This document shows positions 7,007-64,000 of a stretch of DNA of 64,000 nucleotides, one piece after another (position 1 is the first letter of the stretch; every line of letters begins with the position of its first letter). Origin of the DNA: Macrostomum lignano (Eukaryota); the NCBI GenBank assembly GCA_002269645.1, contig NIVC01003640.1, positions 22,208 through 86,207 on the forward strand. Direction: 5' to 3'. Below the pieces are notes generated by a model. That model had not been told where the DNA came from. It did not search any database and saw only the letters and a program-made list of their open reading frames with translations. Made by a program: the position numbers and the translations under genes.

Positions 7007-7229
7007 CTAAATATTAATATAGAGATTAGTATTATTGATCAAAACATTTCTTGCTAAGAAGAACCTTAATAAGATTAGTATCCAACTAGCAATCTTTGCC
7101 CCCCAATGAGGGACATCTAGATAGAATCTCTGTTCTCTACAAGTATCAATAAGATGACCAAACAAAGCCTTCACATAGTCAAAAAAAAACTGCTCAGATG
7201 AAGAGCAATGCAAAAAGAAAACATCCTAA

Positions 7230-8115
7230 GACAGCAAGCATCCCCCCAGATAGCAAGCACCTCCAGATAGCAAGCACCCCCAGATAGCAGGCACCCCCAG
7301 TTAGCAAGCACCCCCAGATGGCAAGCACCCCCCAGATAGCAAGCATCCCCCCAGATAGCAAGCACCCCCCAGATAGCAGGCACCCCCCAGATAGCAAGCA
7401 TCCCCCAGATAGCAAGCACCCCCAGATAGCAAGCACCCCCAGATAGCAGGCACCCCCAGATAGTAGGCACCCCCAGATAGCAGGCTCTCCCAGATAGCAA
7501 GCACCCCCAGATAGCAAGCACTCCCAGATAGCAGGCACCCCCAGATAGCAAGCACCTCCAGATAGCAAGCACCCCCAGATAGCAGGCTCTCCCAGATAGC
7601 AAGCACCCCCAGATAGCAAGCACTCCCAGATAGCAAGCACCCCCAGATAGCAGGCTCTCTCAGATAGCAAGCACCCCCAGATAGCAAGCACCCCCAGATA
7701 GCAAGCACCACCAGATAGCAAGCACCTCCAGATAGCAAGCACCCCCAGATAGCAAGCACCTCCAGATAGCAAGCACCCCCAGATAGCAAGCACCCCCAGA
7801 TAGCAAGCACCTCCAGATAGCAGGCACCCCCAGATAGCAAGCACCTCCAGATAGCAAGCACCACCAGATAGCAAGCACCCCCAGATAGCAGGCTCTCCCA
7901 GATAGCAAGAACCCCCAGATAGCAGGCTCTCCCAGATAGCAAGCACCCCCAGATAGCAAGCACCCCAGATAGCAAGCACCCCAGATAGCAAGCAACCAAT
8001 TGATAGCAAGCACCCCAGATAGCAAGCAACCAATTGATAGCAAGCAACCAATTGATAGCAAGCACCCCAAGATAGCAAGCACCCCAGATAGCAAGCAACC
8101 AATTGATAGCAAGTA
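7230..8115. repeat. 17-bp minisatellite (~50 copies)
   Basis: Unit GATAGCAAGCACCCCCA. The GACYLGVLAIW ORFs are artefacts. Confidence 0.96.
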
Positions 8116-8179
8116 TTGATCCTTAAATAGCAAGCATCCACCGGACAATAAGTAGCAAGTGCAACAATTTCCTTAGCTT

Positions 8180-9200
8180 TATAATGGCTCCTTTGTGATT
8201 GGCATGATGCTTCTTTTTACGTTTGAAACTGCGTCTCCTTTGTTTGACTTGGTGGCTCTTCAATGTTCAACATGGTGGCTTTTTACTGTTAGACATGGTG
8301 GTTCTTCTATGTTTGACATGGTGGCTCTTTTATGTTCGACATGGTGGCTCTTTTATGTTTGACATTGAGTCACGTATATGTTTCACATGATGGCTCTTTT
8401 ATGTTTGACATGATGGCTCTTTATGTTTGACATGGTAGATCTTTTATATTTTACTTAGAGGCATTTTTATGTTCAACATGGTGGCTCTTTAATGTTTGAC
8501 ATGGTGGCTCTTTTATGTTTGACATGGTGGCTCTTTTATGTTTGAAATGTTGTCTCTGTTATGTTCGACATGGTGGCTCTTGAATGTTTGACATGGTGGC
8601 TCTTTAATGTTTGACATGGTGGCTCTTTTATGTTCGACATGGTGGCTCTTTTATGTTCGACATGGTGGCTCTTTTATGTTTGACATGGTGGCTCTTAAAT
8701 GTTTGACATGGTGGCTCTTTATTGTTTGACATGGTGGCTCTTTAATGTTTGACATGGTGGCTCTTTAATGTTTGACATGGTGGCTCTTTAATGTTTGACA
8801 TGGTGGCTCTTTAATGTTCAACATGGTGGCTCTTTAATGTTCAACAAGGTGGCTCTTTTATGTTTGACATGATAGCTCTTTTATGTTTGAAATGTTGTCT
8901 CTGTTATGTTTGACATGGTGGCTCTTGAATGTTTGACATGGTGGCTCTTTAATGTTTGACATGGTGGCTCTTTAATGTTTGACATGATGGCTCCTAAATG
9001 TTTGACATGGTGGCTCTTTAATGTTTGGAATGGTGGCTCTTTTATATTTGGCATGGTGGCTCTTGAATGTTTGACATGGTGGCTCTTTAATGTTTGACAT
9101 GGTGGCTCTTTTATGTTTGACATGATGTCTTTTCTGTGTTCGACATGGTGGCACTTTTATGTTTGGCATGGTGGCTCTTTTATATTTGACATTGCGCTTC
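8180..9200. repeat. 23-bp minisatellite (~44 copies)
   Basis: Unit GACATGGTGGCTCTTT(A/T)ATGTTT, degenerate at both edges. Confidence 0.95.
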
Positions 9201-11204
9201 TTTTATGTTTAGCATTTTGTGTTTTAAAGTGTTTTAATAAAAAAATTATTTTGCTCTACTAAGATTCGAACCCTACATTAGCAGTCGCTACATTACATTA
9301 GTCGCTACATTAGCAGTCCAGTCTGTTCGCATCTTGGCTATCTCTTTTCAATTGGAGAACATGAATTGTGGCCCTTATAATTCAATTCTTACAGCAAGTC
9401 AATTGGAGTAGAAAGTTATGACATAATCAATTTCTCAGTCAGCCAGTATCAGTCTCAATTTAAGTTAGCAATATGGTTACGCAATTTTAATCAAGTCGGG
9501 TGTGTATTTTTTCGACACTGTTTTCATCTTGTTGTGATGCAGTCTTTATCGCTATCGGAATTGAGCCAGTCAGTTTTTTCTCTAGCATTCTTACAATGCA
9601 TTCCAGGCAAGGACTTCTAGTCTAGAAGTCCTTGATTCCAGGTCGAAAGAGCTGCTTGACCTTTGCAAAAAAAGCATGTTTTTTGAATATTTAATCCCTT
9701 TAAAATTGAGCAATTTCTTAGCCAGGATGCATGTACCGTCCCAGAAAAATTTCTGATCGAATGGTGCAAGTTTGAAGAAAATTGGTTGAGCCATTTTCAT
9801 TTTTAGTATATTGGATACTTTTCCAGGTTTCCAGGTTTATTAAAAAAGGTTTTTGGAAATAGAATATAATGTTTTATATTGTCACTTGAAAAAAACTACT
9901 TAACTAGTTTGCTACTTTTCTATATATCAAAATGATTTAAGAAAAACATGTATTTTTACATATAGACTCATGTGTATATTCCTAAGAAATCTAGTATTAG
10001 GTTTTAGCAAGAGATAGGCCTATAGGGATTATAATAAACAATGTATTTAGCCTAAAATATTCTATTAAACAATAGCAACTAAATTCTAAAAGAACTATGG
10101 TGTCAAATCTTAAAGGCCATCTAGGAAAGAGGCTAGGCCCCTATAATTTACACTTGTAGTAAGGCAAAAATGTTCTTATATATATAATTTTAATTTATAA
10201 TTATCGCCAAGCCAATTTTTTACTTATTTTACAATTGTTCACCTATTATAGGCCCTACTACTTTTAAAATGACCTAGTTAGCTTTTTTCAATCCTATATA
10301 CTTTTTTATAGATCTGCACTTAAACTTGAATGTTGAATATGATTTATAAAATATAGGTCTAAGGCTTAAATCAATAAAAGGCTCCCCCAGGCCCAGCCCC
10401 CCTCAGCCACAGCCAAAAAATGTGGGCCATATTGATTGTGGGCCAGACAATATACCAAGTCTATTGTCCACTATTGGGTTGTATTGCTTAATATAGCTTG
10501 CATCCCTTCCCTAAAAACATTTCTGGATCGGTGCCTGATTTATTTTACCACCACGTCCACACAACACGGCCGACGGGTCTTTCGAAGAAATAAAAAGAAA
10601 CTCACGAAGCACATTCTTCAAGAATTTGAAAGTTAGTTTATTATTTTTAAACAAAGCTAGTGAAATATTAACTTTAAAATTTACGTTATTGCTCAGTTTA
10701 ATACAAAAAATGTATTAAAACTTTTTTAAACTGATAATAAAATTAATATTGTATTGCTTAAGACTATTTAAAAAGAGTTTCCTCCTTTTTCAATTTCGCA
10801 TAGCTGAGATTTTTCTGTGCGCCTGCATGGACTCCGACGAGGAGAGACAAGGGGCTGTAAGTCTTGAGTGCCTTTTTTAAATAATTTCCTTGTTTGTACT
10901 ATTTTACCTAAGCAATAATTCACTCGTACGGGTGACTTGAACCTTTGTCTCATTTTAAACTAAGAATAATTCCCCATTGATAAGAGAAAAGAGATATCCC
11001 CATATCTCTTTGGCTTATAAATTTTCAAGCCCATTTTTATAAGTATTCCGGGTACTTATTATAAGTATTATAAGTAAACCATCACCATCTTAACAGAACG
11101 CATGTTTTTAAGTTAACAACGAATACAATCTCCGGTTCAATTCATATTGTCTTAACTTAGCATTTCAATCTAAAAGATTGTGTTAAATTTAAAACTTCCC
11201 CCAG

Positions 11205-11310
11205 AACAAGTCCATTTTCCACAATCAGCCATTTGATGAGTCGTTGCAAGTCTCCGACCCAGAAGACATAGACAGTACATATGAGCCAACTCCGAGAATA
11301 GGAGGAGTAG
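11205..11310 (+). CDS. IFT46: IFT46 N-terminal coding exon A (NKSIFHNQPFDESLQVSDPEDIDSTYEPTPRIGGV)
   Basis: Acceptor CTTCCCCCAG|AAC and donor G|GTAAGC; 106 nt (phase 0 to 1). Carries the NQP(Y/F/H)DE motif I recall from IFT46 N-termini (e.g. Chlamydomonas NQPHDEEV). Not in the ORF track. Confidence 0.72.
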
Positions 11311-11616
11311 GTAAGCAGGAGGTTTTACTGGAAGGAGGTTCTTTAAAAGCGCGTCGTGTTTTTCAATAGATTGAACTCAACTGCTAATCCAATAATTTCT
11401 TAACAATATTAAACATATTTTGTATAACGAAAAATTGATTTGAATTTACTCGTAATCAGCAGCAATTGGCTCACAAATTGCCTTGCAATATAAAAAAAAT
11501 GTTTTCAACGGATTTTTACTCAATGATTTCTGTATCACGTAGTTGTATTTAACCTCGCTTTAAACAGCTGCGTTGCTTATCGCTACATTCGCTAAATTCA
11601 TGACCAAATTTCACAG

Positions 11617-11704
11617 GAAAACTTGCACAGTAACAAACCCTACGACGAGTCCATTGATATTCCCGACACTGAGGATATAGCCACACCCCGAGTGCCATCG
11701 TTCA
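11617..11704 (+). CDS. IFT46: IFT46 N-terminal coding exon B (ENLHSNKPYDESIDIPDTEDIATPRVPSF)
   Basis: Acceptor TTTCACAG|GAA and donor A|GTAAGA; 88 nt (phase 0 to 1). Clear paralog of exon A (NKPYDESI..D.EDI...TPR). Confidence 0.7.
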
Positions 11705-12274
11705 GTAAGACTATTTCCTTTAGTTTACTCTGCCTGAACAAATTACTGCTTACCCAAACATAATACACTACTATATTGCTGTCTTCAGTAGTATCGTTAG
11801 TACCTCAACGTAATTATGCTTCTCGCACTGCGATGCAAATCTTGCACTTAATTTGCTTAACTCTGAGCATAAATCTTGCACAAATTGCTGCCGCTATCCA
11901 CAACTGTTGCCCCCCCCCCCCCCGGATTGCCCTTGCCACTTTCCACTTTCCAGCATTAATTAATCGGGCCTGAGCAGCAGCTGCCTTGAGCACGCAACAC
12001 CCCCCCTGACTCAAATGACACACAATTATTATGAGCCTAGAAGACATTCTCCTCAATTCCTTCCTGCTCTTCCCGCTCAGCCCGAGCTCCCTACCCGAAG
12101 GGAAAGGGGATCCCAGGCTGAGGCTCCCCCCCCCCGAGCCCGAACCTCTCCCCCTTCCCTCCGCAGATTCCCTAACGAGCTCCGCAGTCCGCACTGCACA
12201 CCTTGCCTATAGGAGGGGCTGGGCAAGACGAAGCTGAGCCACTAAGGTATAATACCGAGGCCAGTCCTCCCCAG

Positions 12275-12513
12275 GGGGGTCAGCTGCTTTTCCAACTTCC
12301 CAAATCCCCATCGCTTCGATGTTGCAGCTTCCCGACCAGCCCCACCTGTGGTTCGGCGAGCAGCAGCTGCGGCCCCCCGCCCGGCTGAAAGTCCTCAGGC
12401 ACCCGCCGCCGCCTCCCGCAGGACCGGGTCGAACTCCAGACAGTCGGCAGCAGCAGCAGCAGCATCTCAGGCCCGGCTCGGAGGACAGCGGCAGCGGAAG
12501 GTCTCAGAGAATG
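12275..12513 (+). CDS. IFT46: Probable low-complexity internal IFT46 exon (frame and acceptor unresolved)
   Basis: Strong donor ATG|GTGAGC at 12513. Phase-1-compatible acceptors at 12274 (CTCCCCAG, Gln/Pro-rich frame) or 12327 (TTGCAG, Ala-rich frame). Confidence 0.4.
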
Positions 12514-12617
12514 GTGAGCTGCGGCAGCTGCAGTCCACGGCCGGATCAAGGAGGGGATGGGAGAGTTCATTTCTAGAGGAATGCAGAGGTTTAGGGAACA
12601 GACGCATTATCTCAAGC

Positions 12618-13084
12618 ACCATCACCATCACTATCACCATCACCATCCCCATCACCATCACCATCCCCATCACCATCCCCATCACCATCCCCATCACCAT
12701 CCCCATCACCATCCCCATCACCATCCCCATCACCATCCCCATCCATCCCCATCACCATCTCCATCACCTCCCCATCACCATCACCATCACCATCACCATC
12801 ACCATCACCATCACCATCACCATCACCATCCCCATCACCATCCCCATCACCATCACCATCACCATCACCATCACCATCACCATCACCATCACCATCCCCA
12901 TCACCATCACCATCCCCATCACCATCACCATCACCATCACCATCACCATCACCATCACCATCACCATCCCCATCACCATCCCCATCACCATCACCATCCC
13001 CATCACCATCCCCATCACCATCACCATCACCATCACCATCCCCATCACCATCACCATCACCATCACCATCACCATCCCCATCAC
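12618..13084. repeat. (CATCAC/CATCCC)n hexamer repeat, ~78 units
   Basis: All three + frames are open (His/Pro, Ile/Thr, Ser/Pro). The His/Pro frame runs into the IFT46 core ORF. Confidence 0.96.
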
Positions 13085-13090
13085 CGACAG

Positions 13091-14470
13091 CAGCAGCAGC
13101 CGCAGCAGCAGCCGCGAGCTCCGGCCCGCTCGCCAACCGAGGAGGAGGACGATGACGAGAGCGGCTCCGAGAGCGGTGAGGAATCTGAGGAGGATGACAC
13201 GCAGCCGATCGAGGGCGCGTACAACCCCGAGGACTACAGGGACGTGAGCGCCAGCCACCCGGAGTTCGCCGAGCTGTTCGACTACATCAAGCGCTACACG
13301 CCGCAGCACATCGAGCTGGACCACCGCCTCAAGCCGTTCATCCCGGACTTCATCCCGGCCGTGGGCGACATCGACGCCTTCATCAAGGTGCCGCGGCCGG
13401 ACTCGAAGCCGGACCAGCTGGGCCTGCGGATGCTGGACGAGCCGTGCGCCAGCCAGTCCGACCCCACCGTGCTGGACCTGCAGCTGCGCGCTGTCGGCAA
13501 GCTGCTGGTGTCCAAGAAGACGCAGGTGTCCCGGGTGGAAAACGCCGAACGGAATCCGCACGCAATTGAAAAATGGATCTCCAGCATCTCGGAGCTGCAC
13601 AAGCACAAGCAGCCGCCAACGGTGAACTACACCAAGCCCATGCCCGACATTGAGCAGCTCATGAGCGAGTGGCCGCCCGAGATTGAGGAGCTGCTTAAGG
13701 AGGTCGGGCTGCCCACCTCGGATCTGGAGTGCGACCTGCCCGCCTTCTGCGACATCGTCTGTGGTGGGTTGCGATTGGGTGGCTCATGGGTGCTTGAACA
13801 ACCTGTATAAACACAGGGGCACTCAGGTGCGGACCACAGGACGCTAGAACACACGGTGCACAGGACGCTAACGCAGGATGTACAGGACGCTAACACACGA
13901 TGCACAGGACGCTAACGCAGGGTGTACAGGATGCTAGCACAGGTTGTACAGGGACGCTAACGCAGGGTGTACAGGATGCTAGCACAGGTTGTACAGGGAC
14001 GCTAACGCAAGGTTTACAGGACGCTAACGGAGGGTGTGCAGGGACGCTAATGCTGGGTGTACAGGACGCTAACACAGGTTGTACAGGACGCTAACACAGG
14101 TTGTACAGGACGCTAACACAGGTTGTACAGGACGCTAACACATGTTTTACAGGGACGCTAACGGAGGGTGTGCAGGGACGCTAATGCTAGGTGTACAGGG
14201 ATGCTAACACATGGTACAGAGACGCTAACACTAAGATAAGCCGCCTTTTTCGCCTTAGCAACTGGCATCCCTCTGCTCCCCCTCGCAGGCCTGCTGGACA
14301 TCCCAGTCTACAAGAGCCGGGTGCAGTCCCTGCACGTGCTGTTCACCCTCTACTCGACCTTCGCCAACTCGCAGCACTTCCGCAGCCTGGCCGAGGGCAA
14401 CAGGCTGGACAACCGGCTGAAGCAGCAGCCCCAGCAGCGGGAGAACTCCGACTATGACGGTTTTAACTGA
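13091..14470 (+). CDS. IFT46: Intraflagellar transport protein 46, core and last exons (13091-13763 and 14289-14470)
   Basis: Acidic tract, then EGAYNPEDY...[40 protein letters not shown]...LDEP...QSDPTVL...[11 protein letters not shown], and [29 protein letters not shown], matching IFT46 as recalled. Phase-1 GT-AG intron 13764-14288; stop TGA at 14468-14470. The 5' boundary of the core exon is uncertain. Confidence 0.96.
13815..14235. repeat. 22-23-bp minisatellite in the last IFT46 intron
   Basis: Unit ~GCTAAC(A/G)CAGG(T/G)TGTACAGGAC, with a 45-bp dimeric variant. Confidence 0.9.
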
Positions 14471-15049
14471 CAGCCTGTCTTGACCTTGTCAGTGTGCAAA
14501 CAGTTTTTTTAGTTTTCCTTCTATCCTAGAATCTGCCACCTCTTCTGCTTGTTCAAAATAATACACTGGAAACTGACTGATAAGCTCAGTTTAATCGGCA
14601 CCGAATAATTTAATTATCGTCTACATTTTAGGCATTTTTTTCAAACAGTTCTACTAACAAGTAGAGTATTCAGAGCACGATAAAAATTAAATCAAGTAAA
14701 AAAACACGACAAAATGAGATTGATGTTGTGAAGCTCCTGAATTTAATGAAAATTTCACCCAATGTCAGGCAGTCACTGGTGAGGCTTCAGGTCGAGTTTC
14801 TGACCGCATGCTCTTGAAAAAACAAATTGTTGCATATTATACGGCCAAGCTGGGATACTTGCTGCTCAGGTATTGCACTGGCTTCACTTTTGATGTGAAT
14901 CTTATTAGTCTTTGCTTTGTCAATAATCTTATTATTTAATTAGTTCCACTTTTGAGCTTTCATAACAGCCTGCTTATAACATTGCCATGTTCTTCTATAT
15001 TCTATATTCTACTCGTAGCGGGCAATGAACTGCTACTGGGGTCATAGGC

Positions 15050-15650
15050 AGCTGTACTTGGGTCATAGACAGCTAGTGGGGTCATAGATAGCTAGTGGGG
15101 TCATAGACAGCTAGTGGGGTCATAGACAGCTAGTGGGGGTCATAGACAGCTGGTGGGGGTCATAGACAGCTAGTGGGGGTCATAGACAGCTGGAGGGAGT
15201 TATAGACAGCTAGTGGGGGTCATAGACAGCTAGTGGGGGTCATAGACAGCTAGTGGGGTAATAGACAGCTAGTGGGGTCATAGACAGCTAGTGGGGGTCA
15301 TAGACAGCTAGTGGGGGTCATAGACAGCTAGTGGGGGTCATAGACAGCTAGTGGGGGTCATAGACAGCTAGTGGGGTCATAGACAGCTAGTGGGGGTCAT
15401 AGACAGCTAGTGGGGGTCATAGACAGCTAGTGGGGGTCATAGACAGCTAGTGGGGTCATAGACAGCTGGTGGGTGTCATAGACAGCTAGTGGGGGTCATA
15501 GACAGCTGGTGGGAGTTATAGACAGCTGGTGGGGGTCATAGACAGCTAGTGGGGGTCATAGACAGCTAGTGGGGGTCATAGACAGCTGGTGGGAGTTATA
15601 GACAGCTAGTGGGATCATAGAGAACTATTGGAGGTCAAAGACAGCTAGTG
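15050..15650. repeat. 20-21-bp minisatellite
   Basis: Unit GTCATAGACAGCTAGTGGGG(G). Confidence 0.96.
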
Positions 15651-16032
15651 GTGGTCATAAGGCTTTCATATAAAGAAATTTTTGCCCAGGTATTGTCGCA
15701 AGTTCAGTTTCGACTGGCCTCAGACAGCAGAGCAAGCCGCCATCAACTGCCCTGCCGATGTTTCCTGCCCATTATCAAACAATGGGATTCCGCACTATTC
15801 TGGCTGGAGCAAAGGAGGGTCCCGGACATTCCGAGAGATATTTCTGATGTTCATAAATCAGGTTAAGAAAAACAAGCTTGCAAAAGACTCTAAAAATCTG
15901 CTTTCAAAAAGATTTATTGTCCGGATATAACGCCTTACTATCTGGATTAGTTGGATTAGTAGGTAAATTTTTCAAAGGTTTGGTAGCTTGATAGTCTGCT
16001 GGATTTCAAGCTCACTCGTAATCGATATGCTA

Positions 16033-16676
16033 GCTAGCTAGATAGATAATCCGATAGGTTAGTAACTAGATAATCCGATAGACTAGTAGCTAGATAATCC
16101 GATAGGTTAGTAACTAGATAATCCGATAGATTAGTAGCTAGATAATCCGATAGGTTAGTAACTAGATAATCCGATAGACTAGTAGCTAGATATTCCGATA
16201 GACTAGTAGCTAGATAATCCGATAGACTAGTAGCTAGATAATCCGATAGATTAGTAGCTAGATAATCCGATAGGTTAGTAGCTAGATAATCCGATAGACT
16301 AGTAGCTAGATAATCCGATAGATTAGTAGCTAGATAATCCGATAGGTTAGTAGCTAGATAATCCGATAGATTAGTAGCTAGATAATCCGATAGATTAGTA
16401 GCTAGATAATCCGATAGATTAGTAGCTAGATAATCCGATAGGTTAGTAGCTAGATAATCCGATAGACTAGTAGCTAGATAATCCGATAGATGAGTAGCTA
16501 GATAATCTGATAGATTAGTAGCTAGATAATCTGATAGATGAGTAGCTAGATAATCCGATAGATTAGTAGCTAGATAATCCGATAGATTAGTAGCTAGATA
16601 ATCCGATAGATGAGTAGCTAGATAATCCGATAGATTAGTAGCTAAATAATCCGATAGATGAGTAGCTAGATAATCC
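16033..16676. repeat. 24-bp minisatellite (~27 copies)
   Basis: Unit AGCTAGATAATCCGATAGATTAGT. The DYLATNLS ORF is an artefact. Confidence 0.97.
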
Positions 16677-17044
16677 AACCGCAGGCTGCACATTTCGCTG
16701 GAACAGCAAACTGCTGATTTTCAGCAAGCCGTTAAAGGCCGAAAATTTGAGTCAAAACACAAAACGGTGTCGGAACTTGGAGAGCCTCTTCAAAACTGAT
16801 TGTGGCTTACGAAGAAAATGCGTAGAAATTTTTCTTAATTTTTTCTTGAACCATTGATTTTCTTTTCTGCCTCGTGACCTCCAGGCTGAGCCGGGGATCG
16901 GATTGCGCCCCCCTCGCTGACGGCGCCTCCCAGGCCAGCAACGAACAATCAGAACAGAAGCGCGGAAACAACCTCCGAGACAAAATGAAAAAAAAGGTCA
17001 GGAACTTTAATAATAGAAATTTTTTTCCTACCTTCAAACCAAAA

Positions 17045-18295
17045 AGCACCCCTGACATCAAAATGGCACTCCTGACATCAAAATGCACCCCTGACATCAA
17101 AATGGCACCCCTGACATCAAAATGGCACCCCTGACATCAACATGGCACCCCTGACATCAACATGGCACCCCTGACATCAACATGGCACCCCTGACATCAA
17201 AATGGCACCCCTGACATCAAAATGGCACATCTGACAAAAAAGGGCACCCCTGACATCAAAATGGCACCCCTGACATCAACATGGCGCCCCTGACATAGAA
17301 ATGGCGCCCCTGACATAGAAATGGCGCCCCTGACATAGAAATGGCACCCCTGACATAGAAATGGCGCTCCTAACATAGAAATGGCGCCCCTGACATAGAA
17401 ATGCCACCCCTGACATAGAAATGCCACCCCTGACATAGAAATGGCGCCCCTGACATAGAAATGCCACTCCTGACATAGAAATGCTACCTCTGACATAGAA
17501 ATGGCGCCCCTGACATATAAATGGCACCCCTGACATAGAAATGGCGCCCCTGACATAGAAATGGCACCCCTGAAATCAAAACGGCACCCCTGGAATCAAA
17601 ATGGCACCCCTGACATCAAAATGGCACCCCTGACATCAACATGGCACCCCTGACATCAACATGGCAGCCCTGACATCAAAATGGCACCCCTGACATCAAC
17701 ATGGCACCCCTGACATCAACATGGCACCCCTGACATCAACATGGCAGCCCTGACATCAAAATGGCACCCCTGACATCAACATGGCGCCCCTGACATAGAA
17801 ATGGCGCTCCTAACATAGAAATGGCGCCCCTGACATAGAAATGCCACCCCTGACATAGAAATGCCACCCCTGACATAGAAATGGCGCCCCTGACATAGAA
17901 ATGCCACTCCTGACATAGAAATGCCACCCCTGACATAGAAATGGCGCCCCTGACATAGAAATGGCACCCCTGACATAGAAATGGCGCCCCTGACATAGAA
18001 ATGCCACCCCTGACATAGAAATGGCGCCCCTGACATAGAAATGCCACCCCTGACATAGAAATGGCGCCCCTGACATAGAAATGCCACCCCTGACATAGAA
18101 ATGGCGCCCCTGACATAGAAATGGCACCCCTGACATAGAAATGGCGCCCCTGACATAGAAATGGCACCCCTGACATAGAAATGGCGCCCCTGACATAGAA
18201 ATGCCACCCCTGACATAGAAATGGCACCCCTGAAATCAAAACGGCACCCCTGGAATCAAAATGGCACCCCTGACATCAAAATGGCACCCCTGACT
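17045..18295. repeat. 20-bp minisatellite (~62 copies) with an internal block duplication
   Basis: Unit ATGGCACCCCTGACAT(AG/CA)AA. The rare variant ATGGCGCTCCTAACATAGAA recurs 440 bp apart (17361, 17801). Confidence 0.97.
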
Positions 18296-19852: not shown

Positions 19853-20883
19853 TCAGACGGGCCGCCTGGCTCGGTTCGCCCTGGCCCGGCCTGTCCTGGC
19901 CAGGATCTGGTACAGCCCGCGCCGGAAGCTCTCAGACAGGCAGCTGTAGATGGCGGGGTTGGCGCAGGCGTTGCAATAGGACAGCAGGATGGTCAGCTGG
20001 TTGAAGCGGTTCAGCGCCATCAGGTTGGCGGCCGAGACGTCGGGCAGGAAGAACACCCGACAGACGAAGAAGGCGGTGACGATGTCGGCGACGTGCAGCG
20101 GCAGCCAGCAGATGAAGAAGGAGAAGACCAGCGCCACAACCAGGGCGATGACGCGCCGACTGTTGGCGGCGCCGCGGTGCCGGCCGAAGCGCCACAGGCG
20201 GCGCAGCATCCGCACCGAGCAGAAGGCGATGATGACGAACGGCACGGCGTAGCCCAGCGTGGCGCGGCCGGCGAACAGGCCGATCTTGAGCGGACCGTAC
20301 TGCTCAGACAGCTCGTAGGTGCAGACGCCATTCTTCACCCGGTACACCAGCGGCCAGGGCAGCGCCACCAGTACGGCGCCGGCCCACAGAGCGCCTGCGT
20401 AGCGCGGAGCGGCGGCCGCGCGCTGGGAGCCGCGCATCGAGCCCGCCACTCCTCGGCCGGCGGCGCTGCCGAGGCCGGAGACGGACAGGCAGCGGTCGAC
20501 GGCCATGGCGGTGAGGAAGGCGGCGGAGGCGTGCATGGCCAGCGGCTGCAGGAAGTGCAGAAGTTTGCACATGGGGTCACCCAGAGGCCAGGCACTGGCC
20601 CAGAAGAACACGATGGTGTGCACCGGGGCGCAGATGGCCAGGAAGAACAGGTCGGCGGCGGCAAGGTGGGTCACGTAAGTGTGCACCGCGGACCGGCGAT
20701 ACTGCCTGGCACGGATGCTGACCAGGAGGATGAGGCTGTTTCCAAGGAGACCGGCGGAGGTCACCAGCAGGTAGACAGCCACAATGACGTTGTCTCCGGT
20801 TTGAGAGATCTCAGACAGGCGCTCGAGGTGGTTCTCGATGCTGACGCCGCAGTGCCATTTCCCTTCGTGGTCGGAGAGGTTCG
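19853..20883 (-). CDS. Rhodopsin-family neuropeptide GPCR, galanin/allatostatin-A receptor-like (main 7TM exon; N-terminal exon not located)
   Basis: GN (TM1), LAAAD (TM2), WPLGDPMC, DRC (TM3), W (TM4), GYAVP (TM5), CWLP (TM6), NACANPAIY (TM7), FRRGL helix 8. Acceptor CCTTTCGCAG at 20884, phase 1. The upstream MGHTQLGSYT part of the ORF is repeat-derived. Confidence 0.88.
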
Positions 20884-20917
20884 CTGCGAAAGGAGGGGGC
20901 GGGGACGGGACGAGCTG

Positions 20918-21680
20918 TGTATGACCCAAGCTGTGTATGACCCAAGCTGTGTATGACCTAAGCTGTGTATGAGCCAAGCCGTGTATGAGCCAAGCTGTGT
21001 ATGAGCCAAGCCGTGTATGAGCCAAGCTGTGTATGACCCAAGCTGTGTATGACCCAAGCTGTGTATGACCCAAGCTGTGTATGACCCAAGCTGTGTATGA
21101 CCCAAGCTGTGTATGACCCAAGCTGTGTATGACCCAAGCTGTGTATGACCCAAGCTGTGTATGACCTAAGCTGTGTATGACCCAAGCTGTGTATGACCTA
21201 AGCTGTGTATGACCTAAGCTGTGTATGACCTAAGCCGTGTATGACCCAAGCTGTGTATGACTCAAGCTGTGTATGACCTAAGCTGTGTATGACCCAAGCT
21301 GTGTATGACCCAAGCTGTGTATGACCCAAGCTGTGTATGACCCAAGCTGTCTGTGGCCCAAGCTGTCTGTGGCCCAAGCTGTCCGTGGCCCAAGCTGTCT
21401 GTGGCCCAAGCTGTCCGTGGCCCAAGCTGTCTGTGGCCCAAGCTGTCTGTGACCCAAGCTGTCTGTGACCCAAGCTGTCTGTGACCCAAGCTGTCTGTGG
21501 CCCAAACTGTCTGTGGCCCAAGCTGTCTGTGACCCAAGCTGTCTGTGGCCCAAGCTGTCTGTGGCCCAAGCTGTCTGTGACCCAAGCTGTCTGTGGCCCA
21601 AGCTGTCTGTGACCCAAACTGTCTGTGGCCCAAGCTGTCTGTGACCCAAACTGTCTGTGGCCCAAGCTGTCTGTGGCCTA
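20918..21680. repeat. 16-bp minisatellite in two variant domains, upstream of the GPCR main exon
   Basis: CCAAGCTGTGTATGAC (20918-21347), then CCAAGCTGTCTGTG(G/A)C (21348-21680). Confidence 0.97.
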
Positions 21681-22900: not shown

Positions 22901-24179
22901 CAGTCAGCAGTGTGTCAGACAGCACAGTCAGCAGTGTGTCAGATAGCACACAGTCAGCAGTGTGTCAGACAGCACACAGTCAGCAGTGTGTCAGATAGCA
23001 CACAGTCAGCAGTGTGTCAGACAGCACAGTCAGCAGTGTGTCAGACAGCACAGTCAGCAGTGTGTCAGATAGCACACAGTCAGCAGTGTGTCAGATAGCA
23101 CACAGTCAGCAGTGTGTCAGATAGCACACAGTCAGCAGTGTGTCAGACAGGACAGTCAGCAGTGTGTCAGATAGCACACAGTCAGCAGTGTGTCAGATAG
23201 CACACAGTCAGCAGTGTGTCAGATAGCACACAGTCAGCAGTGTGTCAGACAGCACAGTCAGCAGTGTGTCAGACAGCACAGTCAGCAGTGTGTCAGATAG
23301 CACACAGTCAGCAGTGTGTCAGACAGGACAGTCAGCAGTGTGTCAGATAGCACACAGTCAGCAGTGTGTCAGACAGGACAGTCAGCAGTGTGTCAGATAG
23401 CACACAGTCAGCAGTGTGTCAGACAGGACAGTCAGCAGTGTGTCAGATAGCACACAGTCAGCAGTGTGTCAGACAGGACAGTCAGTGTGTCAGACAGGAC
23501 AGTCAGTGTGTCAGACAGGACAGTCAGTGTGTCAGACAGGACAGTCAGTGTGTCAGACAGGACAGTCAGTGTGTCAGACAGGACAGTCAGTGTGTCAGAC
23601 AGGACAGTCAGTGTGTCAGACAAGACAGTCAGTGTGTCAGACAGGACAGTCAGTGTGTCAGAAAGGACAGTCAGTGTGTCAGACAGGACGGTCAGCAGTG
23701 TGTCAGACAGCACAGTCAGTGTGTCAGACAGGACAGTCAGCAGTGTGTCAGACAGGACAGTCAGTGTGTCAGACAGGACAGTCAGCAGTGTGTCAGACAG
23801 GACAGTCAGTGTGTCAGACAGGACAGTCAGTGTGTCAGACAGGACAGTCAGTGTGTCAGAAAGGACAGTCAGTGTGTCAGACAGGACAGTCAGTGTGTCA
23901 GACAGCTCAGTCAGTGTGTCAGACAGGACAGTCAGTGTGTCAGACAGGACAGTCAGTGTGTCAGACAGGACAGTCAGTGTGTCAGACAGCTCAGTCAGTG
24001 TGTCAGACAGGACAGTCAGTGTGTCAGACAGGACAGTCAGTGTGTCAGAAAGGACAGTCAGTGTGTCAGACAGGACAGTCAGTGTGTCAGACAGCTCAGT
24101 CAGTGTGTCAGACAGGACAGTCAGTGTGTCAAACAGGACAGTCAGTGTGTCAGATAGGACAGTCAGTGTGTCAGACAGC
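22901..24179. repeat. 21-26-bp minisatellite (GTCAG(CAG)TGTGTCAGACAG core)
   Basis: 24-26-mers in the first half and 21-mers in the second half. An inverted relative lies at 26714-26945. Confidence 0.96.
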
Positions 24180-24582
24180 TGGTTTTGTTCCACCTGGCCG
24201 CTCAAAGCTGCCGAGTGCGGGAGCCGGCAAGCCACAACTGAAGCGGAAAGCCCTTACTGATCATACTAATCAGATAGTAAAAGTGCACTTTGCTCAGTGC
24301 CCACCAACTCACCCTCGCTGGCGTTCGCGCCGGTGAGATTGCTCATTTTGCCAAATTGCTTTTGCCGCTTCCAGGAGCAGAAAGACGATTTGCCGGCTCT
24401 ATGGGCTGATGGAGAGAGAACTCGGGGTTGAGGCAGTGGGGACCAGATGTTCGCCTGCGAGATTTATACCTGTGCCCCCCCATTCGCTCTCCCCTCCCCT
24501 TCCACTGCAGGCGCGGCCAAGGAGGCCCACAACCAGGACATGGAGTCAGCATTGCAAGACTACTACAGGCTGGTGTGGTGGC

Positions 24583-26006
24583 TTCTGCGTCACATTCACT
24601 GAGGCTTTCACAGCTTCTGCGTCACATTCACTGAGGTTTTCACAGCTTCTGCGTCACATTCACTGAGGTTTTCACAGCTTCTGCGTCACATTCACTGAGA
24701 CTTTCACAGCTTCTGCGTCACATTCACTGAGACTTTCACAGCTTCTGTGTCACATTCACTGAGGTTTTCACAGCTTCTGCGTCACATTCACTGAGGCTTT
24801 CACAGCGGTTTTCACAGCTTCTGCGTCACATTCACTGAGGTTTTCACAGCTTCTGCGTCACATTCACTGAGGCTTTCACAGCTTCTGCGTCACATTCACT
24901 GAGGCTTTCACAGCTTCTGCGTCACATTCACTGAGGTTTTCACAGCTTCTGCGTCACATTCACTGAGGTTTTCACAGCTTCTGCGTCACATTCACTGAGG
25001 TTTTCACAGCTTCTGCGTCACATTCACTGAGGTTTTCACAGCTTCTGCGTCACATTCACTGAGGCTTTCACAGCTTCTGCGTCACATTCACTGAGGTTTT
25101 CACAGCTTCTGCGTCACATTCACTGAGGCTTTCACAGCTTCTGCGTCACATTCACTGAGGTTTTCACAGCTTCTGCGTCACATTCACTGAGGCTTTCACA
25201 GCTTCTGCGTCACATTCACTGAGGTTTTCACAGCTTCTGCGTCACATTCACTGAGACTTTCACAGCTTCTGCGTCACATTCACTGAGACTTTCACAGCTT
25301 CTGCGTCACATTCACTGAGACTTTCACAGCTTCTGTGTCACATTCACTGAGGTTTTCACAGCTTCTGCGTCACATTCACTGAGGCTTTCACAGCGGTTTT
25401 CACAGCTTCTGCGTCACATTCACTGAGGTTTTCACAGCTTCTGCGTCACATTCACTGAGGCTTTCACAGCTTCTGCGTCACATTCACTGAGGCTTTCACA
25501 GCTTCTGCGTCACATTCACTGAGGTTTTCACAGCTTCTGCGTCACATTCACTGAGGTTTTCACAGCTTCTGCGTCACATTCACTGAGGCTTTCACAGCTT
25601 CTGCGTCACATTCACTGAGGTTTTCACAGCTTCTGCGTCACATTCACTGAGGCTTTCACAGCTTCTGCGTCACATTCACTGAGGTTTTCACAGCTTCTGC
25701 GTCACATTCACTGAGGTTTTCACAGCTTCTGCGTCACATTCACTGAGACTTTCACAGCTTCTGCGTCACATTCACTGAGACTTTCACAGCTTCTGTGTCA
25801 CATTCACTGAGGTTTTCACAGCTTCTGCGTCACATTCACTGAGGCTTTCACAGCTTCTGCGTCACATTCACTGAGGCTTTCACAGCGGTTTTCACAGCTT
25901 CTGCGTCACATTCACTGAGGTTTTCACAGCTTCTGCGTCACATTCACTGAGGCTTTCACAGCGGTTTTCACAGCTTCTGCGTCACATTCACTGAGGCTTT
26001 CACAGC
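24583..26006. repeat. 32-bp satellite (~44 copies) with higher-order structure
   Basis: Unit CACAGCTTCTGCGTCACATTCACTGAGG(T/C)TTT. The variant series GAGACT, TGTGTC, CACAGCGGTTTT recurs three times. Confidence 0.97.
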
Positions 26007-60838: not shown

Positions 60839-62692
60839 TACATGTAACCCTTATCTAACTCACTGGCTTTCCGGACGTTCACAAATGAATTTTTTGCAGA
60901 CCTGCGAAATACGCAATATTCTACTGCGGCAAGTAGTAAAGTAGGTTTTTTCTATGCTTACTCAGAAAGAATTTATTCTAGATTGTAGGCTTTTTGAACT
61001 TTTTGACTTTCGATTTCGTCTTGCTTTCTGAGTATGAAATGCAAATCAGCTGACCTGCCTTAATCCCAAACATTTTTTATTTTGCAATTTACCCTCTCAT
61101 GGCTGAAGTAATGTCCATGCACAAGGCTCGCAGCACCGACTGACCCTCCCAAGATGACTCTCTCGGCTACTTTCTAAGCGTGACCGACTTTCATGGCGAC
61201 TGCCGTCATGAATAGTTAATTTGGACAGGGGGCCCTGTGGCCCTGCAGTTCTTGCATGAAGAGTGCAGCAGTGGAATGGGATGTTGGGAAGTTATTTATT
61301 GGAAGCCTCTCAATCCCCCATCTGCCCGAGCCCTCGCCCAGACTACTCAACCAAATCCGAGAAATCCGCATGCATCACGCAGCTTCGCTATTCCACTGTC
61401 AGTAACAATGGTTTCAAGAACAAAGGACTGCCAGGCAGCAGTTCCTCAGCTACTGCTGCTTTGACAAGCAGAATTCTCTTTGGAAGTTTTGAATTTGAAA
61501 GCAGAGGAAAAGTGATTGATGGGTTGCATTTAGGGGGGCCGTAGCCCAGCGGTAGCGCAGCTGCTCTGGTGTGCCAGCGAGCCAGGCTCGATTCCAAGTG
61601 CAGCCACATTAATTTGGGGCTGAATTGGAATCTCGGCTTGGCTCTGCTCGTGCAATTAACGGCATTGAGAGCCAACTCCCCAAGGCGCAGTGAAGTGTAC
61701 ATGCCTAACGATAATATAAAGTTAGGGCCGCTGTACACTCCTGTGTGAGTGTGTGCCTGCGTACGTATCCGCGCGCTTGTATGCCTGCTCAGGGGAGTCG
61801 GCGGAATGGGCAGTAATGCCTCTCGCCGGTTGTGTGCCCATGTCGCTTAAAGTGCGCCAGGGTGCACACAACCCCTGCATCTAATAAAAAATGGGTTGCA
61901 TTGATGGGTTCGAACCTCAGCCGGTTGATTTTCAAAGGTTGACAACAGATGCGAAGGCTTGATCTGCTTGACAGCTTGCAGGGCCGGGGAGCTTTAGACA
62001 GATGATCCCCAGCAGGGGACTCTGTACTCGTTTTTTATCTAGTCTAGTTTTTAATCCAGTCTAGTTTTTAATTTAGTCCAGTTTTTAATCTAGTTCAGCA
62101 TTGTCTATAGACTGGAGTTAACTTGAAATTCTCTCCGACGGGAGAACCTTGTGGGAAAACCTCGGCGGGAAAACTTCCTGCGGTAAATTCTCGTGCTCCC
62201 TCTTCAGGCAGTGGTTACAGCGATCTGGGCCCAGGCGGTTGGCCCTCATGGACTTGGGGGCATCGCACGACAAGCCGTTCGCGGAATCGAACCCAATAAG
62301 AATCCAAAATGTGCCAAGAGATTCAGCTGCTCTCCGACAGTTTAATACGCGCTGCAAACGCCGGCAAGTTGCTTTTTTCTGTGGGCGTGAACACGACTTT
62401 TTAGGTGGAGTGGAGATATGAGTGGAGATATGCGGGAAAAGCAAAAAAATTATCACCAAATTTGGTCCGACAGGCGCGGTGCAACCGCTGCATTTTTGAG
62501 AAGTTTTATGAGCACGGGAGGCCAAAGCTGGTAGCGGCTGTGCGTGGGCGGTGCTGAGCTTTGGCAACTTTTTGTGCTTGTCACTTGCACCTGAGAGATT
62601 TGAAATCTGCAGTTAACTCCTGCCGGATGGAAATCTTTTAGAAATTTGCTATGCAGTTCAGGAATTATTGACCATAAAGAGACTGTGAGAAA

Positions 62693-64000
62693 CCTGCTAT
62701 AGATTCTGTGAGAAATCTGCTATAGATTCTGTGAGAAATCTGCTATAGATTCTGTGAGAAATCTGCTATAGATTCTGTGAGAAATCTGCTATAGATTCTG
62801 TGAGAAATCTGCTATAGATTCTGTGAGAAATCTGCTATAGATTCTGTGAGAAATCTGCGATAGATTGTGAGAAATCTGCTATAGATTCTGTGAGAAATCT
62901 GCTATAGATTCTGTGAGAAATCTGCTATAGATTCTGTGAGAAATCTGCTATAGATTCTGTGAGAAATCTGCTATAGATTCTGTGAGAAATCTGCTATAGA
63001 TTCTGTGAGAAATCTGCTATAGATTCTGTGAGAAATCTGCTATAGATTCTGTGAGAAATCTGCTATAGATTCTGTGAGAAATCTGCTATAGATTCTGTGA
63101 GAAATCTGCTATAGATTCTGTGAGAAATCTGCTATAGATTCTGTGAGAAATCTGCTATAGATTCTGTGAGAAATCTGCTATAGATTCTGTGAGAAATCTG
63201 CTATAGATTCTGTGAGAAATCTGCTATAGATTCTGTGAGAAATCTGCTATAGATTCTGTGAGAAATCTGCTATAGATTCTGTGAGAAATCTGCGATAGAT
63301 TGTGAGAAATCTGCTATAGATTCTGTGAGAAATCTGCTATAGATTGTGAGAAATCTGCTGGGTTCTGTGAGAAATCTGCTAGAATGTGGTAGAAATCTGC
63401 TAGAATGTGGTAGAAATCTGCTAGAAACCTGCTAGAAATCTGCTAGAAATCTGCTAGAGATCTGCTAGAAACCTGCTAGAAATCTGCTAGAAATCTGCTA
63501 GAAATCTGCTAGAAATCTGCTAGAAACCTGCTAGAAATCTGCTAGAAATCTGCTAGAAATCATGTAAAAATCTACTAGAAATCTGCTAGAAATCTGCTAG
63601 AGATTTGCTAGAAACCTGCTAGAAATCTGCTAGAAATCTGCTAGAAACCTGCTAGAAATCTGCTAGAAATCTGCTAGAAATCTGCTAGAAATCTGCTAGA
63701 AATCTGCTAGAAATCTGCTAGAAATCTGCTAGAAACCTGCTAGAAATCTGCTAGAAATCTGCTAGAAATCATGTAAAAAATCTGCTAGAAATCTGCTAGA
63801 AATCTGCTAGAGATTTGCTAGAAATCTGCTAGAAATCTGCTAGAAACCTGCTAGAAATCTGCTAGAAATCTGCTAGAAATCTGCTAGAAATCTGCTAGAA
63901 ATCTGCTAGAAATCTGCTAGAAATCTGCTAGAAATCTGCTAGAAATCTGGTAAAAATCTGCTAGAAATCTGCTAGAAATCTGCTAGAAATCTGCTAGAAA
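62693..64000. repeat. 23-bp satellite switching to an 11-bp satellite (runs off the window end)
   Basis: GAAATCTGCTATAGATTCTGTGA to ~63350, then GAAATCTGCTA. Confidence 0.97.

What the first reader, a model, noticed from the sequence alone, without database searches (positions are those of the whole stretch)
11205..11704. IFT46 has two tandem paralogous N-terminal exons that look mutually exclusive
Exon A (11205-11310, NQPFDESLQVSDPEDIDSTYEPTPR) and exon B (11617-11704, NKPYDESIDIPDTEDIATPR) both have canonical AG/GTAAG boundaries, enter in phase 0, leave in phase 1 and are 3n+1 long (106 and 88 nt). Including both shifts the frame, so only one can be used per mRNA, the classic signature of mutually exclusive exons. 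Each encodes the short conserved motif in the otherwise disordered IFT46 N-terminus, the region known in Chlamydomonas to bind ODA16 for outer dynein arm transport. Isoforms tuned to different cilium types (motile epidermal, sperm, sensory) are an inference. I do not know of such an exon pair in IFT46, and neither exon is in the ORF track.
Basis: partly seen in the sequence, partly recalled or inferred. Interest (0 to 1): 0.8.

Follow-up and report, generated by a model that had tools for sequence, protein, structure and literature searches.

The report
Alternative dynein-adaptor docking exons in IFT46
The flatworm Macrostomum lignano carries two old, selectively maintained copies of the small IFT46 exon that encodes the docking site for the dynein-arm adaptor ODA16/DAW1, arranged so that a working mRNA can hold only one; this would give two versions of a cilium-building protein, but use of the second exon in RNA has not been shown.

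Summary
The window is the Macrostomum lignano IFT46 locus Mlig020277.g2. Exon A (11205-11310, 106 nt) and exon B (11617-11704, 88 nt) both have CAG/GTAAG boundaries, enter in phase 0, leave in phase 1 and are 3n+1 long. Including both gives a stop at codon 51; skipping both gives a stop at codon 93.

A profile built from 76 IFT46 N-termini of other animals hits only these two places in the 64 kb (49 and 40 bits; next best 5 bits). Both exons carry the Nxxx(D/E)E motif shown in Chlamydomonas to bind ODA16.

Exon A is in the RNA-seq-based GenBank models. Exon B is in one UniProt model (A0A1I8IRV3). Exon B is not a decaying copy: it shares 17 of 20 residues with the only motif exon of trematodes, with synonymous sites saturated (pN 0.06, pS about 1). 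A and B differ at nearly all synonymous sites.

Tandem copies of this exon with the same phase logic also occur in Capitella teleta (three copies) and in three unidentified metagenomic eukaryote contigs (two each). Seven other animal loci have one copy.

No RNA junction evidence for exon B, or for true mutual exclusion, could be reached with these tools. I file it as a new member of a known kind: a frame-enforced pair of mutually exclusive exons made by tandem exon duplication.

The parts
10803..10856 (+). IFT46 exon 1: short 5' UTR, ATG at 10827, coding MDSDEERQGA, ends in phase 0, donor GCT|gtaagt
   Evidence: tblastn of P0001, 100% identity. Splice context. Identical in the paralogous loci L001 and L002.
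11205..11310 (+). Long-form ODA16-binding motif NQPFDESLQVSDPEDIDSTYEPTPR. Used in all GenBank Mlig_3_7 models.
   Evidence: Motif HMM 49.2 bits. Same length and phase as Lottia exon 2, also 106 nt.
11307..11312 (+). Possible weaker alternative donor GGA|GTAGGT, 4 nt upstream of the main donor. It would make exon A 102 nt and allow an in-frame A+B mRNA with two motifs.
   Evidence: sequence arithmetic only; no evidence of use.
11311..11616 (+). Intron of 306 nt between the two alternative exons, 33% GC
   Evidence: Too long for steric exclusion. No significant RNA structure.
11617..11704 (+). Short-form motif NKPYDESIDIPDTEDIATPR. Orthologous to the single motif exon of trematodes.
   Evidence: Motif HMM 40.4 bits. 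Present in UniProt A0A1I8IRV3 / P0125. 17/20 residues identical to Calicophoron, pN 0.06 and pS about 1. Identical in all three paralogous loci.
11705..12421 (+). Intron between exon 2b and exon 3. Holds CTGCTTACC (11746-11754), complementary to the exon A donor GGTAAGCAG (11310-11318).
   Evidence: pair I1. A 9-bp match is expected by chance about 5 times in this region (my estimate), so it is only a lead.
12422..12513 (+). Exon 3, 92 nt. Its first two bases complete the split codon (Gly after A, Arg after B). Ends in phase 0 with ATG.
12514..13090 (+). Intron 3, containing a (CACCAT)n microsatellite at 12617-13085
13091..13763 (+). Exon 4: acidic linker and most of the IFT46_B_C core domain
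14289..14470 (+). Exon 5: end of the core domain and stop codon (TGA 14468-14470)

Best explanation
The M. lignano IFT46 gene has a two-member cluster of homologous alternative exons, 2a (A) and 2b (B), made by tandem duplication of the ancestral exon 2. That ancestral exon is about 103-106 nt in the related animals measured and runs from phase 0 to phase 1.

Each copy is 3n+1 long. Only mRNAs with exactly one copy keep the IFT46 reading frame. Double inclusion or double skipping creates early stop codons, and such mRNAs are expected to be removed by nonsense-mediated decay.

The two productive mRNAs encode proteins of 360 and 354 aa that are identical except for about 30 residues. This segment is the peptide that, in Chlamydomonas, docks the outer-dynein-arm adaptor ODA16/DAW1 onto IFT trains. 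Both versions keep the Nxxx(D/E)E core and the following strand. A has the long form usual in animals (…DSTYEPTPR). B has the short form found in trematodes (…EDIATPR).

Isoform A is the major form in whole-worm RNA. B is proposed to be a minor form, or one specific to a cell type or stage, with altered adaptor or cargo binding.

Shown by the data: exon anatomy, frame logic, homology, purifying selection on both exons, and recurrence of the same arrangement in other animals.

Inferred: that B is spliced today, that NMD removes the non-productive combinations, and that the two peptides differ in function.
For: - **Anatomy and frame logic:**
- **Only two motif-coding pieces in 64 kb, both highly significant:**
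- **Exon A in RNA-based models.** It is in the GenBank models of all three paralogous loci. That annotation was built from RNA-seq with TACO run at --isoform-frac 0.75, which discards minor isoforms (PMC5730564).
- **Exon B joined to exon 3 in a public model:** UniProt A0A1I8IRV3.
- **A versus B.** They share 49% nucleotide identity. Synonymous sites are saturated (pS 0.95), but pN is 0.23 in the motif core. P = 0.001 for so few non-synonymous changes.
- **B versus trematodes.** Against Calicophoron, 17/20 residues are identical, with 14 synonymous and 3 non-synonymous differences (P = 2e-7). The Schistosoma haematobium comparison points the same way (pN 0.12, pS 0.84, P = 3e-4).
- **Exon B is intact and identical in all three M. 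lignano paralogous loci:**
- **Exon-like GC content.** A is 45% and B is 49%, against 31-33% for intron 1 and the A-B intron; the first 300 nt after B are 46%.
- **The motif is the validated ODA16-binding site:** PMC11879689.
- **The same architecture elsewhere.** Tandem copies, all phase 0 to 1 and 3n+1, occur in Capitella teleta (three exons of 109, 130 and 112 nt) and in three metagenomic eukaryote contigs. For two of those contigs (L018, L022) the donor sites are only candidates, chosen among several.
- **The single exon of Lottia (106 nt) and Lingula (103 or 100 nt) has the same phase class:**
Against: - No RNA-seq junction, EST or long read containing exon B could be examined.
- A protein search with the B isoform returned nothing.
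- The only B-containing model differs from the window by one base in a C run and uses a non-consensus donor. It may therefore be a prediction guided by trematode proteins rather than by RNA (and my analysis).
- The three paralogous loci are too similar (introns 1-1.5% diverged) to show extra conservation of exon B.
- Seven other animal loci have a single exon. The arrangement is therefore not general, and whether it arose once or several times is unresolved.
- No regulatory RNA structure was found.
Confidence: 0.72

Rival explanations
1. Exon B is used, but not by cis-splicing from exon 1. It would be the first coding exon of a transcript from an internal start, or of an SL trans-spliced mRNA. 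The 35-nt M. lignano spliced leader ends in ATG. Exon B starts in phase 0, so SL|exon B would read M-ENLHSNKPYDES… in frame, like trematode IFT46 proteins that begin M..DKPYDE.
For: - The SL sequence CGGTCTCTTACTGCGAAGACTCAATTTATTGCATG ends in ATG, and 30-39% of M. lignano genes are trans-spliced (PMC8629364; PMC5730564).
- The UniProt model P0125 begins exactly at the first codon of exon B without a Met.
- Trematode proteins start right at the motif.
Against: - The exon B acceptor (TCACAG) does not fit the reported trans-splice acceptor motif [T/C]TNCAG.
- Two strong upstream cis donors (exon 1 and exon A) would normally outcompete trans-splicing; the cited requirement is an acceptor with no upstream donor.
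- No promoter evidence exists.
Confidence: 0.1
2. Exon B is a recently silenced relic, or a poison exon. Either it is no longer spliced into productive mRNA, or it is included only after exon A, where its in-frame TAA triggers NMD and lowers IFT46 output.
For: - A+B inclusion gives a stop at codon 51.
- All five A-type public models skip B.
- No RNA evidence for B was obtained.
Against: - A poison exon needs no protein-level conservation. Yet B keeps 17/20 residues with trematodes while synonymous sites are saturated.
- It has an intact frame and consensus CAG/GTAAG sites in all three paralogous loci.
- The published annotation pipeline would have removed a minor isoform anyway.
Confidence: 0.1
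3. Both exons are joined in frame through the weaker donor GGA|GTAGGT at 11306/11307. Exon A would then be 102 nt, and the protein would carry two ODA16-binding motifs in tandem.
For: Arithmetic only: 102 + 88 nt keeps the frame, and the resulting ORF is open.
Against: - The donor 4 nt downstream (TAG|GTAAGC) matches the consensus much better.
- The M. lignano donor consensus is GT[G/A]AG, which GTAGG does not fit.
- No public model has both motifs.
Confidence: 0.03

Closest known systems
Frame-enforced mutually exclusive exon pairs created by tandem exon duplication (for example the mutually exclusive exon clusters surveyed in C. elegans, PMC4165533; general origin of such clusters, PMC6071210)
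   Same: Adjacent homologous exons of similar length in one intron slot. Identical splice phases and canonical GT-AG sites. Lengths not divisible by 3, so double inclusion or double skipping breaks the frame.
   Different: - No transcript-level proof yet.
- No docking/selector RNA structure, short-intron steric block or U2/U12 incompatibility was found.
- The alternative segment is a short linear docking motif in a disordered tail, not part of a folded domain or channel segment.
Chlamydomonas IFT46 N-terminal ODA16-binding motif (residues 23-44, core 29-Nxxx(D/E)E-34; PMC11879689, PMC5576905)
   Same: Both exons encode N-x-x-x-D-E followed by an alternating hydrophobic/acidic stretch near the N-terminus of IFT46: NQPFDE in A, NKPYDE in B.
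   Different: - In Chlamydomonas, and in all species discussed in those papers, there is one copy of the motif. Here there are two alternative copies.
- Binding of either flatworm peptide to flatworm DAW1/ODA16 is untested.
- Mammalian IFT46 has lost the motif.
Trematode IFT46 N-terminus (Schistosoma, Fasciola, Clonorchis, Calicophoron: M..DKPYDE[ST][IV]DVPDSEDIATPR)
   Same: Exon B shares the K after N/D, the I/V-D-x-P-D-x-E-D-I-A stretch and the same 5-residue deletion before TPR. 17/20 residues are identical to Calicophoron.
   Different: - The two trematodes examined at genome level have only this one exon, with no A-type copy within about 10 kb upstream or in the gene.
- In most trematode models the exon carries the start codon.
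Capitella teleta IFT46 locus (KB300512.1), found here
   Same: Three tandem motif exons (109, 130 and 112 nt), all AG/GT bounded, phase 0 to 1 and 3n+1, lying between exon 1 and the next exon. One short-form copy and two long-form copies.
   Different: - The order is short form first. M. lignano has the long form first.
- Two of the copies look like a recent Capitella-specific duplication (shared SVY).
- Only the middle copy is in the public model P0002. No RNA evidence was examined.

Membership tests
IFT46 gene | IFT46_B_C core domain (PF12317) | tested here: met
   260 bits, E 2e-77. 100% identical to M. lignano PAA50422.1, and 60-67% identical to IFT46 of other animals.
IFT46 gene | N-terminal Nxxx(D/E)E ODA16-binding motif | tested here: met
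   NQPFDE in exon A and NKPYDE in exon B. HMM of 76 animal N-termini scores them at 49.2 and 40.4 bits. Motif definition from PMC11879689.
Mutually exclusive exon cluster from tandem exon duplication | Neighbouring exons in the same slot that are homologous to each other | tested here: met
   306 nt apart, between exon 1 and exon 3. 12/29 aligned residues identical; tblastn E 0.013; both match the same family profile.
Mutually exclusive exon cluster from tandem exon duplication | Same splice phases, similar length, canonical splice sites | tested here: met
   Both phase 0 to 1; 106 and 88 nt; CAG acceptors and GTAAG donors. These match the M. lignano consensus GT[G/A]AG and CAG.
Mutually exclusive exon cluster from tandem exon duplication | Mature mRNAs contain exactly one member; each member is seen in transcripts | not testable with these tools
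   A-only models are RNA-seq based. A B-only model exists in UniProt, but its evidence basis is unknown. No read-level data were accessible.
Frame/NMD-enforced class of mutually exclusive exons | Exon lengths not divisible by 3, so both or neither gives a premature stop | tested here: met
   Both included: stop at codon 51. Neither included: stop at codon 93. Both stops lie well upstream of the last exon junction. Actual NMD degradation was not tested.
RNA-structure (docking site / selector) class of mutually exclusive exons | Conserved competing base-pairings between intronic elements | tested here: inconclusive
   Folding of 11296-11770 gives z = -0.15. The best inverted repeat is a 9-bp match of the exon A donor to 11746-11754, at chance level. 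The paralogues are too similar for a covariation test.
Steric-hindrance class of mutually exclusive exons | Intron between the alternative exons too short to be spliced | tested here: not met
   The intron is 306 nt.
U2/U12 incompatibility class of mutually exclusive exons | One U12-type and one U2-type splice site pairing | tested here: not met
   All four sites are ordinary GT-AG with GTAAG donors.

The most novel reading that the evidence does not exclude
The exon that encodes the ODA16/DAW1 docking peptide of IFT46 is a recurrent, and partly ancient, hotspot of mutually exclusive splicing in spiralian animals. The evidence is a flatworm pair at least as old as the Macrostomorpha-Neodermata split, an annelid triplet, and further cases in uncultured eukaryotes. 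On this reading, the alternative peptides set which dynein-arm cargo or adaptor is loaded onto IFT trains in different cilium types, such as multiciliated epidermis, protonephridial flame cells and sensory cilia. That would be the first case of alternative splicing re-wiring an IFT cargo-docking site.
Probability: 0.25. Interest if true: 0.75.

Novelty: new member of a known kind. Interest (0 to 1): 0.6.

Why it matters
How IFT trains choose their cargo is a central open question in cilium biology. The IFT46 N-terminal peptide is one of the few cargo-adaptor docking sites defined at residue level.

A genome that keeps two alternative versions of exactly this peptide under purifying selection gives a natural experiment on docking specificity. 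Other animals have done the same independently or inherited it.

The experiment is feasible in an organism with transgenesis, RNAi and single-cell data. Feasible tests include exon-specific in situ hybridisation, isoform-specific knock-down, and peptide-DAW1 binding assays.

The result also corrects annotation. Exon B is missing from GenBank models, at least one trematode model (Calicophoron P0029) is N-terminally truncated, and two Capitella exons are absent from the one public model examined (P0002).

If exon B turns out to be unused, the case remains an ordinary duplicated exon.

Tried and rejected
1. **Protein search with the B-isoform N-terminus.** It returned nothing, not even the A-isoform protein that shares about 100 residues, probably because of low-complexity filtering. 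It is therefore uninformative about transcripts.
2. **Comparison of the three paralogous M. lignano loci.** Exon B has 0/88 differences, but the flanking introns differ by only 1-1.5%. There is no statistical power.
3. **Search for selector/docking RNA structure.** There was no signal above shuffled controls.
4. **Reading the His-rich ORF 12557-13810 as coding.** Rejected: the (CACCAT)n array lies in intron 3 of the RNA-based model.
5. **The acceptor at 12326 and the frame-0 path through 12327-12513.** Rejected after mapping P0001, which uses the acceptor at 12421|12422.
6. **Look-up of the Liolophura locus (P0003).** Not on record.
7. **RefSeq isoform sets of ten other animals.** Their isoforms differ by presence or absence of the motif or by small indels. 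None has alternative motif exons.
8. **B-type profile against 1.84 billion representative proteins.** Most of the hits I retrieved are trematode or trematode-like fragments (two are named Paragonimus). Two unnamed environmental fragments (P0225, P0229) could not be assigned to a taxon.
9. **Literature check on Macrostomum sperm axonemes.** It gave no usable statement.

Full report
**What the window is.** The 64-kb window comes from the flatworm Macrostomum lignano. The long ORF at 12557-13810 contains an IFT46_B_C domain (PF12317, 260 bits). Its core is 100% identical to GenBank PAA50422.1, 'BOX15_Mlig020277g2' (P0001).

Mapping P0001 onto the window and checking splice sites gives this gene model on the + strand:
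- exon 1: 10803-10856, with the ATG at 10827;
- exon A: 11205-11310;
- exon 3: 12422-12513;
- exon 4: 13091-13763;
- exon 5: 14289-14470.

The His-rich (CACCAT)n stretch that a naive ORF scan joins to the core lies in intron 3.

**Check of the observation.**
- Exon A is 106 nt, with acceptor cccccag|AAC and donor TAG|gtaagc.
- Exon B is 88 nt, with acceptor tttcacag|GAA and donor TCA|gtaaga.
- Both start in phase 0 after exon 1 and end in phase 1. Exon 3 supplies the two missing bases, giving Gly after A and Arg after B.
- Exon1-A-3-4-5 encodes 360 aa. Exon1-B-3-4-5 encodes 354 aa.
- Including both exons gives TAA at codon 51. Including neither gives a stop at codon 93.

The splice sites fit the published M. 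lignano consensus: donor GT[G/A]AG and acceptor CAG (PMC8629364).

**Is the resemblance more than chance?** I built a profile from the N-terminal 34 residues of 76 distinct IFT46 proteins of other animals, with no Macrostomum sequence included. I searched all 2893 stop-to-stop fragments of the six frames of the window. The piece containing exon A scores 49.2 bits (E 6e-14). The piece containing exon B scores 40.4 bits (E 3.5e-11). The next best fragment scores 5.3 bits (E 3.2). There are thus exactly two IFT46 N-terminal motif exons in the window.

**What the peptide is.** A 2025 study showed that residues 23-44 of Chlamydomonas IFT46, with the core 29-Nxxx(D/E)E-34, bind ODA16. Mutating the motif abolishes binding. 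The motif is conserved in many ciliated organisms but lost in mammals (PMC11879689; see also PMC5576905). Exon A has NQPFDE and exon B has NKPYDE, each followed by the alternating hydrophobic/acidic stretch. Both exons therefore encode a complete version of the docking peptide for the outer-dynein-arm adaptor.

**Evidence that each exon is used.**

*Exon A.* It is in the GenBank models of all three paralogous M. lignano loci (g1, g2, g3) and in two UniProt entries. That annotation was assembled from RNA-seq with StringTie and TACO. TACO was run with '--isoform-frac 0.75', which removes minor isoforms (PMC5730564). Exon A is therefore the major form in whole worms. The absence of exon B from GenBank says little.

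*Exon B.* It is the first exon of UniProt A0A1I8IRV3 (P0125), which reads ENLHSNKPYDESIDIPDTEDIATPECH-RPGRTP…. Compared with the window, this model needs one C fewer in the CCCC run and a GTTCAG donor 5 nt upstream. I read that as an error of the older assembly, with the gene predictor compensating for it. The poly-Q and acidic-tract lengths show it is the same locus as the window. I could not establish what evidence this model rests on.

No read-level RNA data were reachable. A protein search with the B isoform found nothing.

**Selection on exon B.** This is the strongest result.
- A and B share only 49% nucleotide identity over 29 aligned codons. Synonymous sites are saturated (pS 0.95). 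In the 16-codon motif core pN is 0.23, and six of the nine identical residues use different codons. The probability of so few non-synonymous changes under neutrality is 0.001.
- Exon B is nearly identical at protein level to the N-terminal motif of trematode IFT46. The M. lignano sequence is NKPYDESIDIPDTEDIATPR; Calicophoron has DKPYDESIDVPDSEDIATPR, and Schistosoma, Fasciola and Clonorchis are similar.
- Against Calicophoron, 17/20 residues are identical while 14 of the 17 nucleotide differences are synonymous (pN 0.06, pS about 1, P = 2e-7).

A sequence that had drifted since such a deep split could not look like this. Exon B has been translated for most of its history. It is also intact and identical in all three M. 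lignano paralogous loci, although the surrounding introns differ by only 1-1.5%, so that comparison has no power on its own. Both exons stand out in GC content: 45% and 49%, against 31-33% for intron 1 and the A-B intron.

**Origin.**
- Exon A has the long form usual in animals (…STYEPTPR). It has the same length (106 nt) and phases as exon 2 of Lottia; Lingula has 103 or 100 nt in the same phases.
- Exon B shares with trematodes the K after the first N/D, the …EDIATPR end and the same 5-residue deletion.
- The most economical reading is that the duplication predates the split of Macrostomorpha and Neodermata, and that trematodes lost the A-type copy. Calicophoron and Schistosoma haematobium have a single motif exon in the gene and in 10 kb upstream.
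- Parallel evolution cannot be excluded. Short forms have arisen elsewhere, for example in lamprey and in one Capitella copy.

**The same arrangement in other animals.** I scanned genomic loci of other species with the motif profile.
- Capitella teleta has three tandem motif exons: L003 7285-7393, 7490-7619 and 7780-7891, of 109, 130 and 112 nt. All have good acceptors and GT donors, all are phase 0 to 1 and 3n+1, and they lie between exon 1 (phase 0) and the next exon (phase 1). Only the middle one is in the public model.
- A scan of metagenome contigs found three more unidentified eukaryote contigs with two tandem motif exons each (L012, L018, L022). Plausible AG/GT boundaries again give 3n+1 lengths; for L018 and L022 several candidate donors remain.
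- Owenia, Lingula, Lottia, Tubulanus, Branchiostoma, Calicophoron and Schistosoma have one copy.
- RefSeq isoform sets of ten other animals show forms with and without the motif, but no alternative motif exons.

Because the ancestral exon is 3n+1, any tandem duplication of it automatically yields a frame-enforced alternative pair. Such a pair has been kept at least twice in named species.

**Mechanism.**

*Shown by sequence:* the frame rule. Only single inclusion is productive, and the two non-productive combinations carry early stops far upstream of the last junction, which makes them typical NMD substrates.

*Not supported:*
- steric exclusion, because the intron between A and B is 306 nt;
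- U2/U12 incompatibility, because all sites are ordinary GT-AG;
- a docking/selector RNA structure. Folding gives z = -0.15. The only notable pairing is a 9-bp match between the exon A donor and 11746-11754, at chance level.

*Inferred:* trans-acting splicing regulators choose between A and B in different cells or stages, and the two peptides differ in affinity or partner choice for DAW1/ODA16 or a related adaptor.

**Rivals.**
- *Spliced-leader start.* The M. lignano spliced leader ends in ATG and both exons start in phase 0. An SL-exon B mRNA would therefore start the protein right before the motif, as in trematodes. The B-only model starting exactly at the acceptor fits this. The acceptor does not match the reported trans-splice motif, and two upstream donors argue against it.
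- *Poison exon or recently silenced relic.* This is hard to reconcile with the protein-level conservation.
- *Two motifs in one protein.* A weaker donor 4 nt upstream in exon A (GGA|GTAGGT) would allow an in-frame A+B protein with two motifs. It cannot be excluded without RNA data, but nothing supports it.

**Comparison with what is known, and novelty.** The arrangement meets the sequence-level criteria of a mutually exclusive exon cluster made by tandem exon duplication, of the frame/NMD-enforced class (general background: PMC4165533, PMC6071210). The transcript-level criterion could not be tested. Full-text searches found no description of mutually exclusive or duplicated exons in IFT46. I therefore rate it a new member of a known kind.

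Its interest lies in where it sits. It replaces precisely the residue-level-defined docking site of a cargo adaptor on IFT trains. It is under selection, and it recurs in an annelid and in other eukaryotes. That is why I score it moderately high despite the missing RNA evidence.

Noticed in passing
window 12617-13085 (within intron 3, 12514-13090): A (CACCAT)n microsatellite of about 470 bp keeps the exon 4 reading frame open. A plain ORF scan therefore reports a spurious 417-aa His-rich 'IFT46' ORF (12557-13810). The array length differs among the three paralogous loci.
   Followed up: partly
window 13836-14231 (intron 4); L001 13566-15163: A 22-nt minisatellite in IFT46 intron 4 is strongly expanded in the paralogous locus L001. 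This explains why that gene spans 5.4 kb instead of 3.4-3.7 kb.
   Followed up: no
window 19853-21121, minus strand: An intronless ORF encodes a rhodopsin-family GPCR (PF00001, 133 bits). Its 5' part runs into a 16-nt tandem repeat (20913-21670) that translates as GHTQLGSYTAWVIHSL units.
   Followed up: partly
whole window: The density of minisatellites is very high: 34 Tandem Repeats Finder rows with score 300 or more, with periods of 16-64 nt, for example at 7229-9210, 15038-18294, 22901-25962 and 62683-64000.
   Followed up: no
L004 9910-10018 (Calicophoron daubneyi CAXVIE010000822.1): The public IFT46 model P0029 starts at an internal Met. The ODA16-binding motif (DKPYDESIDVPDSEDIATPR) lies in the same ORF directly upstream, so the model is N-terminally truncated. 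No in-frame ATG precedes the motif in that exon, so the start must come from further upstream or from a spliced leader.
   Followed up: partly
L003 7285-7393 and 7780-7891 (Capitella teleta KB300512.1): Two additional tandem copies of the IFT46 motif exon flank the annotated one and are absent from the public model P0002. All three are 3n+1 and phase 0 to 1.
   Followed up: yes
L012 519-612 and 1319-1424; L018 320-431 and 2100-2214; L022 1470-1602 and 2998-3124: Metagenome contigs from unidentified eukaryotes (Ga0126339_10085773, JAAUYG010010459.1, JAAUYG010306965.1) each carry two tandem IFT46 motif exons. The source organisms could not be determined.
   Followed up: partly
proteins P0127, P0021, P0073, P0009 (Liolophura, Antedon, Hydractinia, unnamed): Predicted isoforms in several animals lack the motif exon altogether and start at a downstream Met (M[ST][ED]xSDD…). 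IFT46 forms with and without the ODA16 docking site may therefore be common.
   Followed up: no
L001 3277-7889 and L002 3475-7964, minus strand: In both paralogous loci the upstream neighbour of IFT46 is a protein kinase gene with a SAM domain, which shows that synteny is conserved among the M. lignano gene copies.
   Followed up: no
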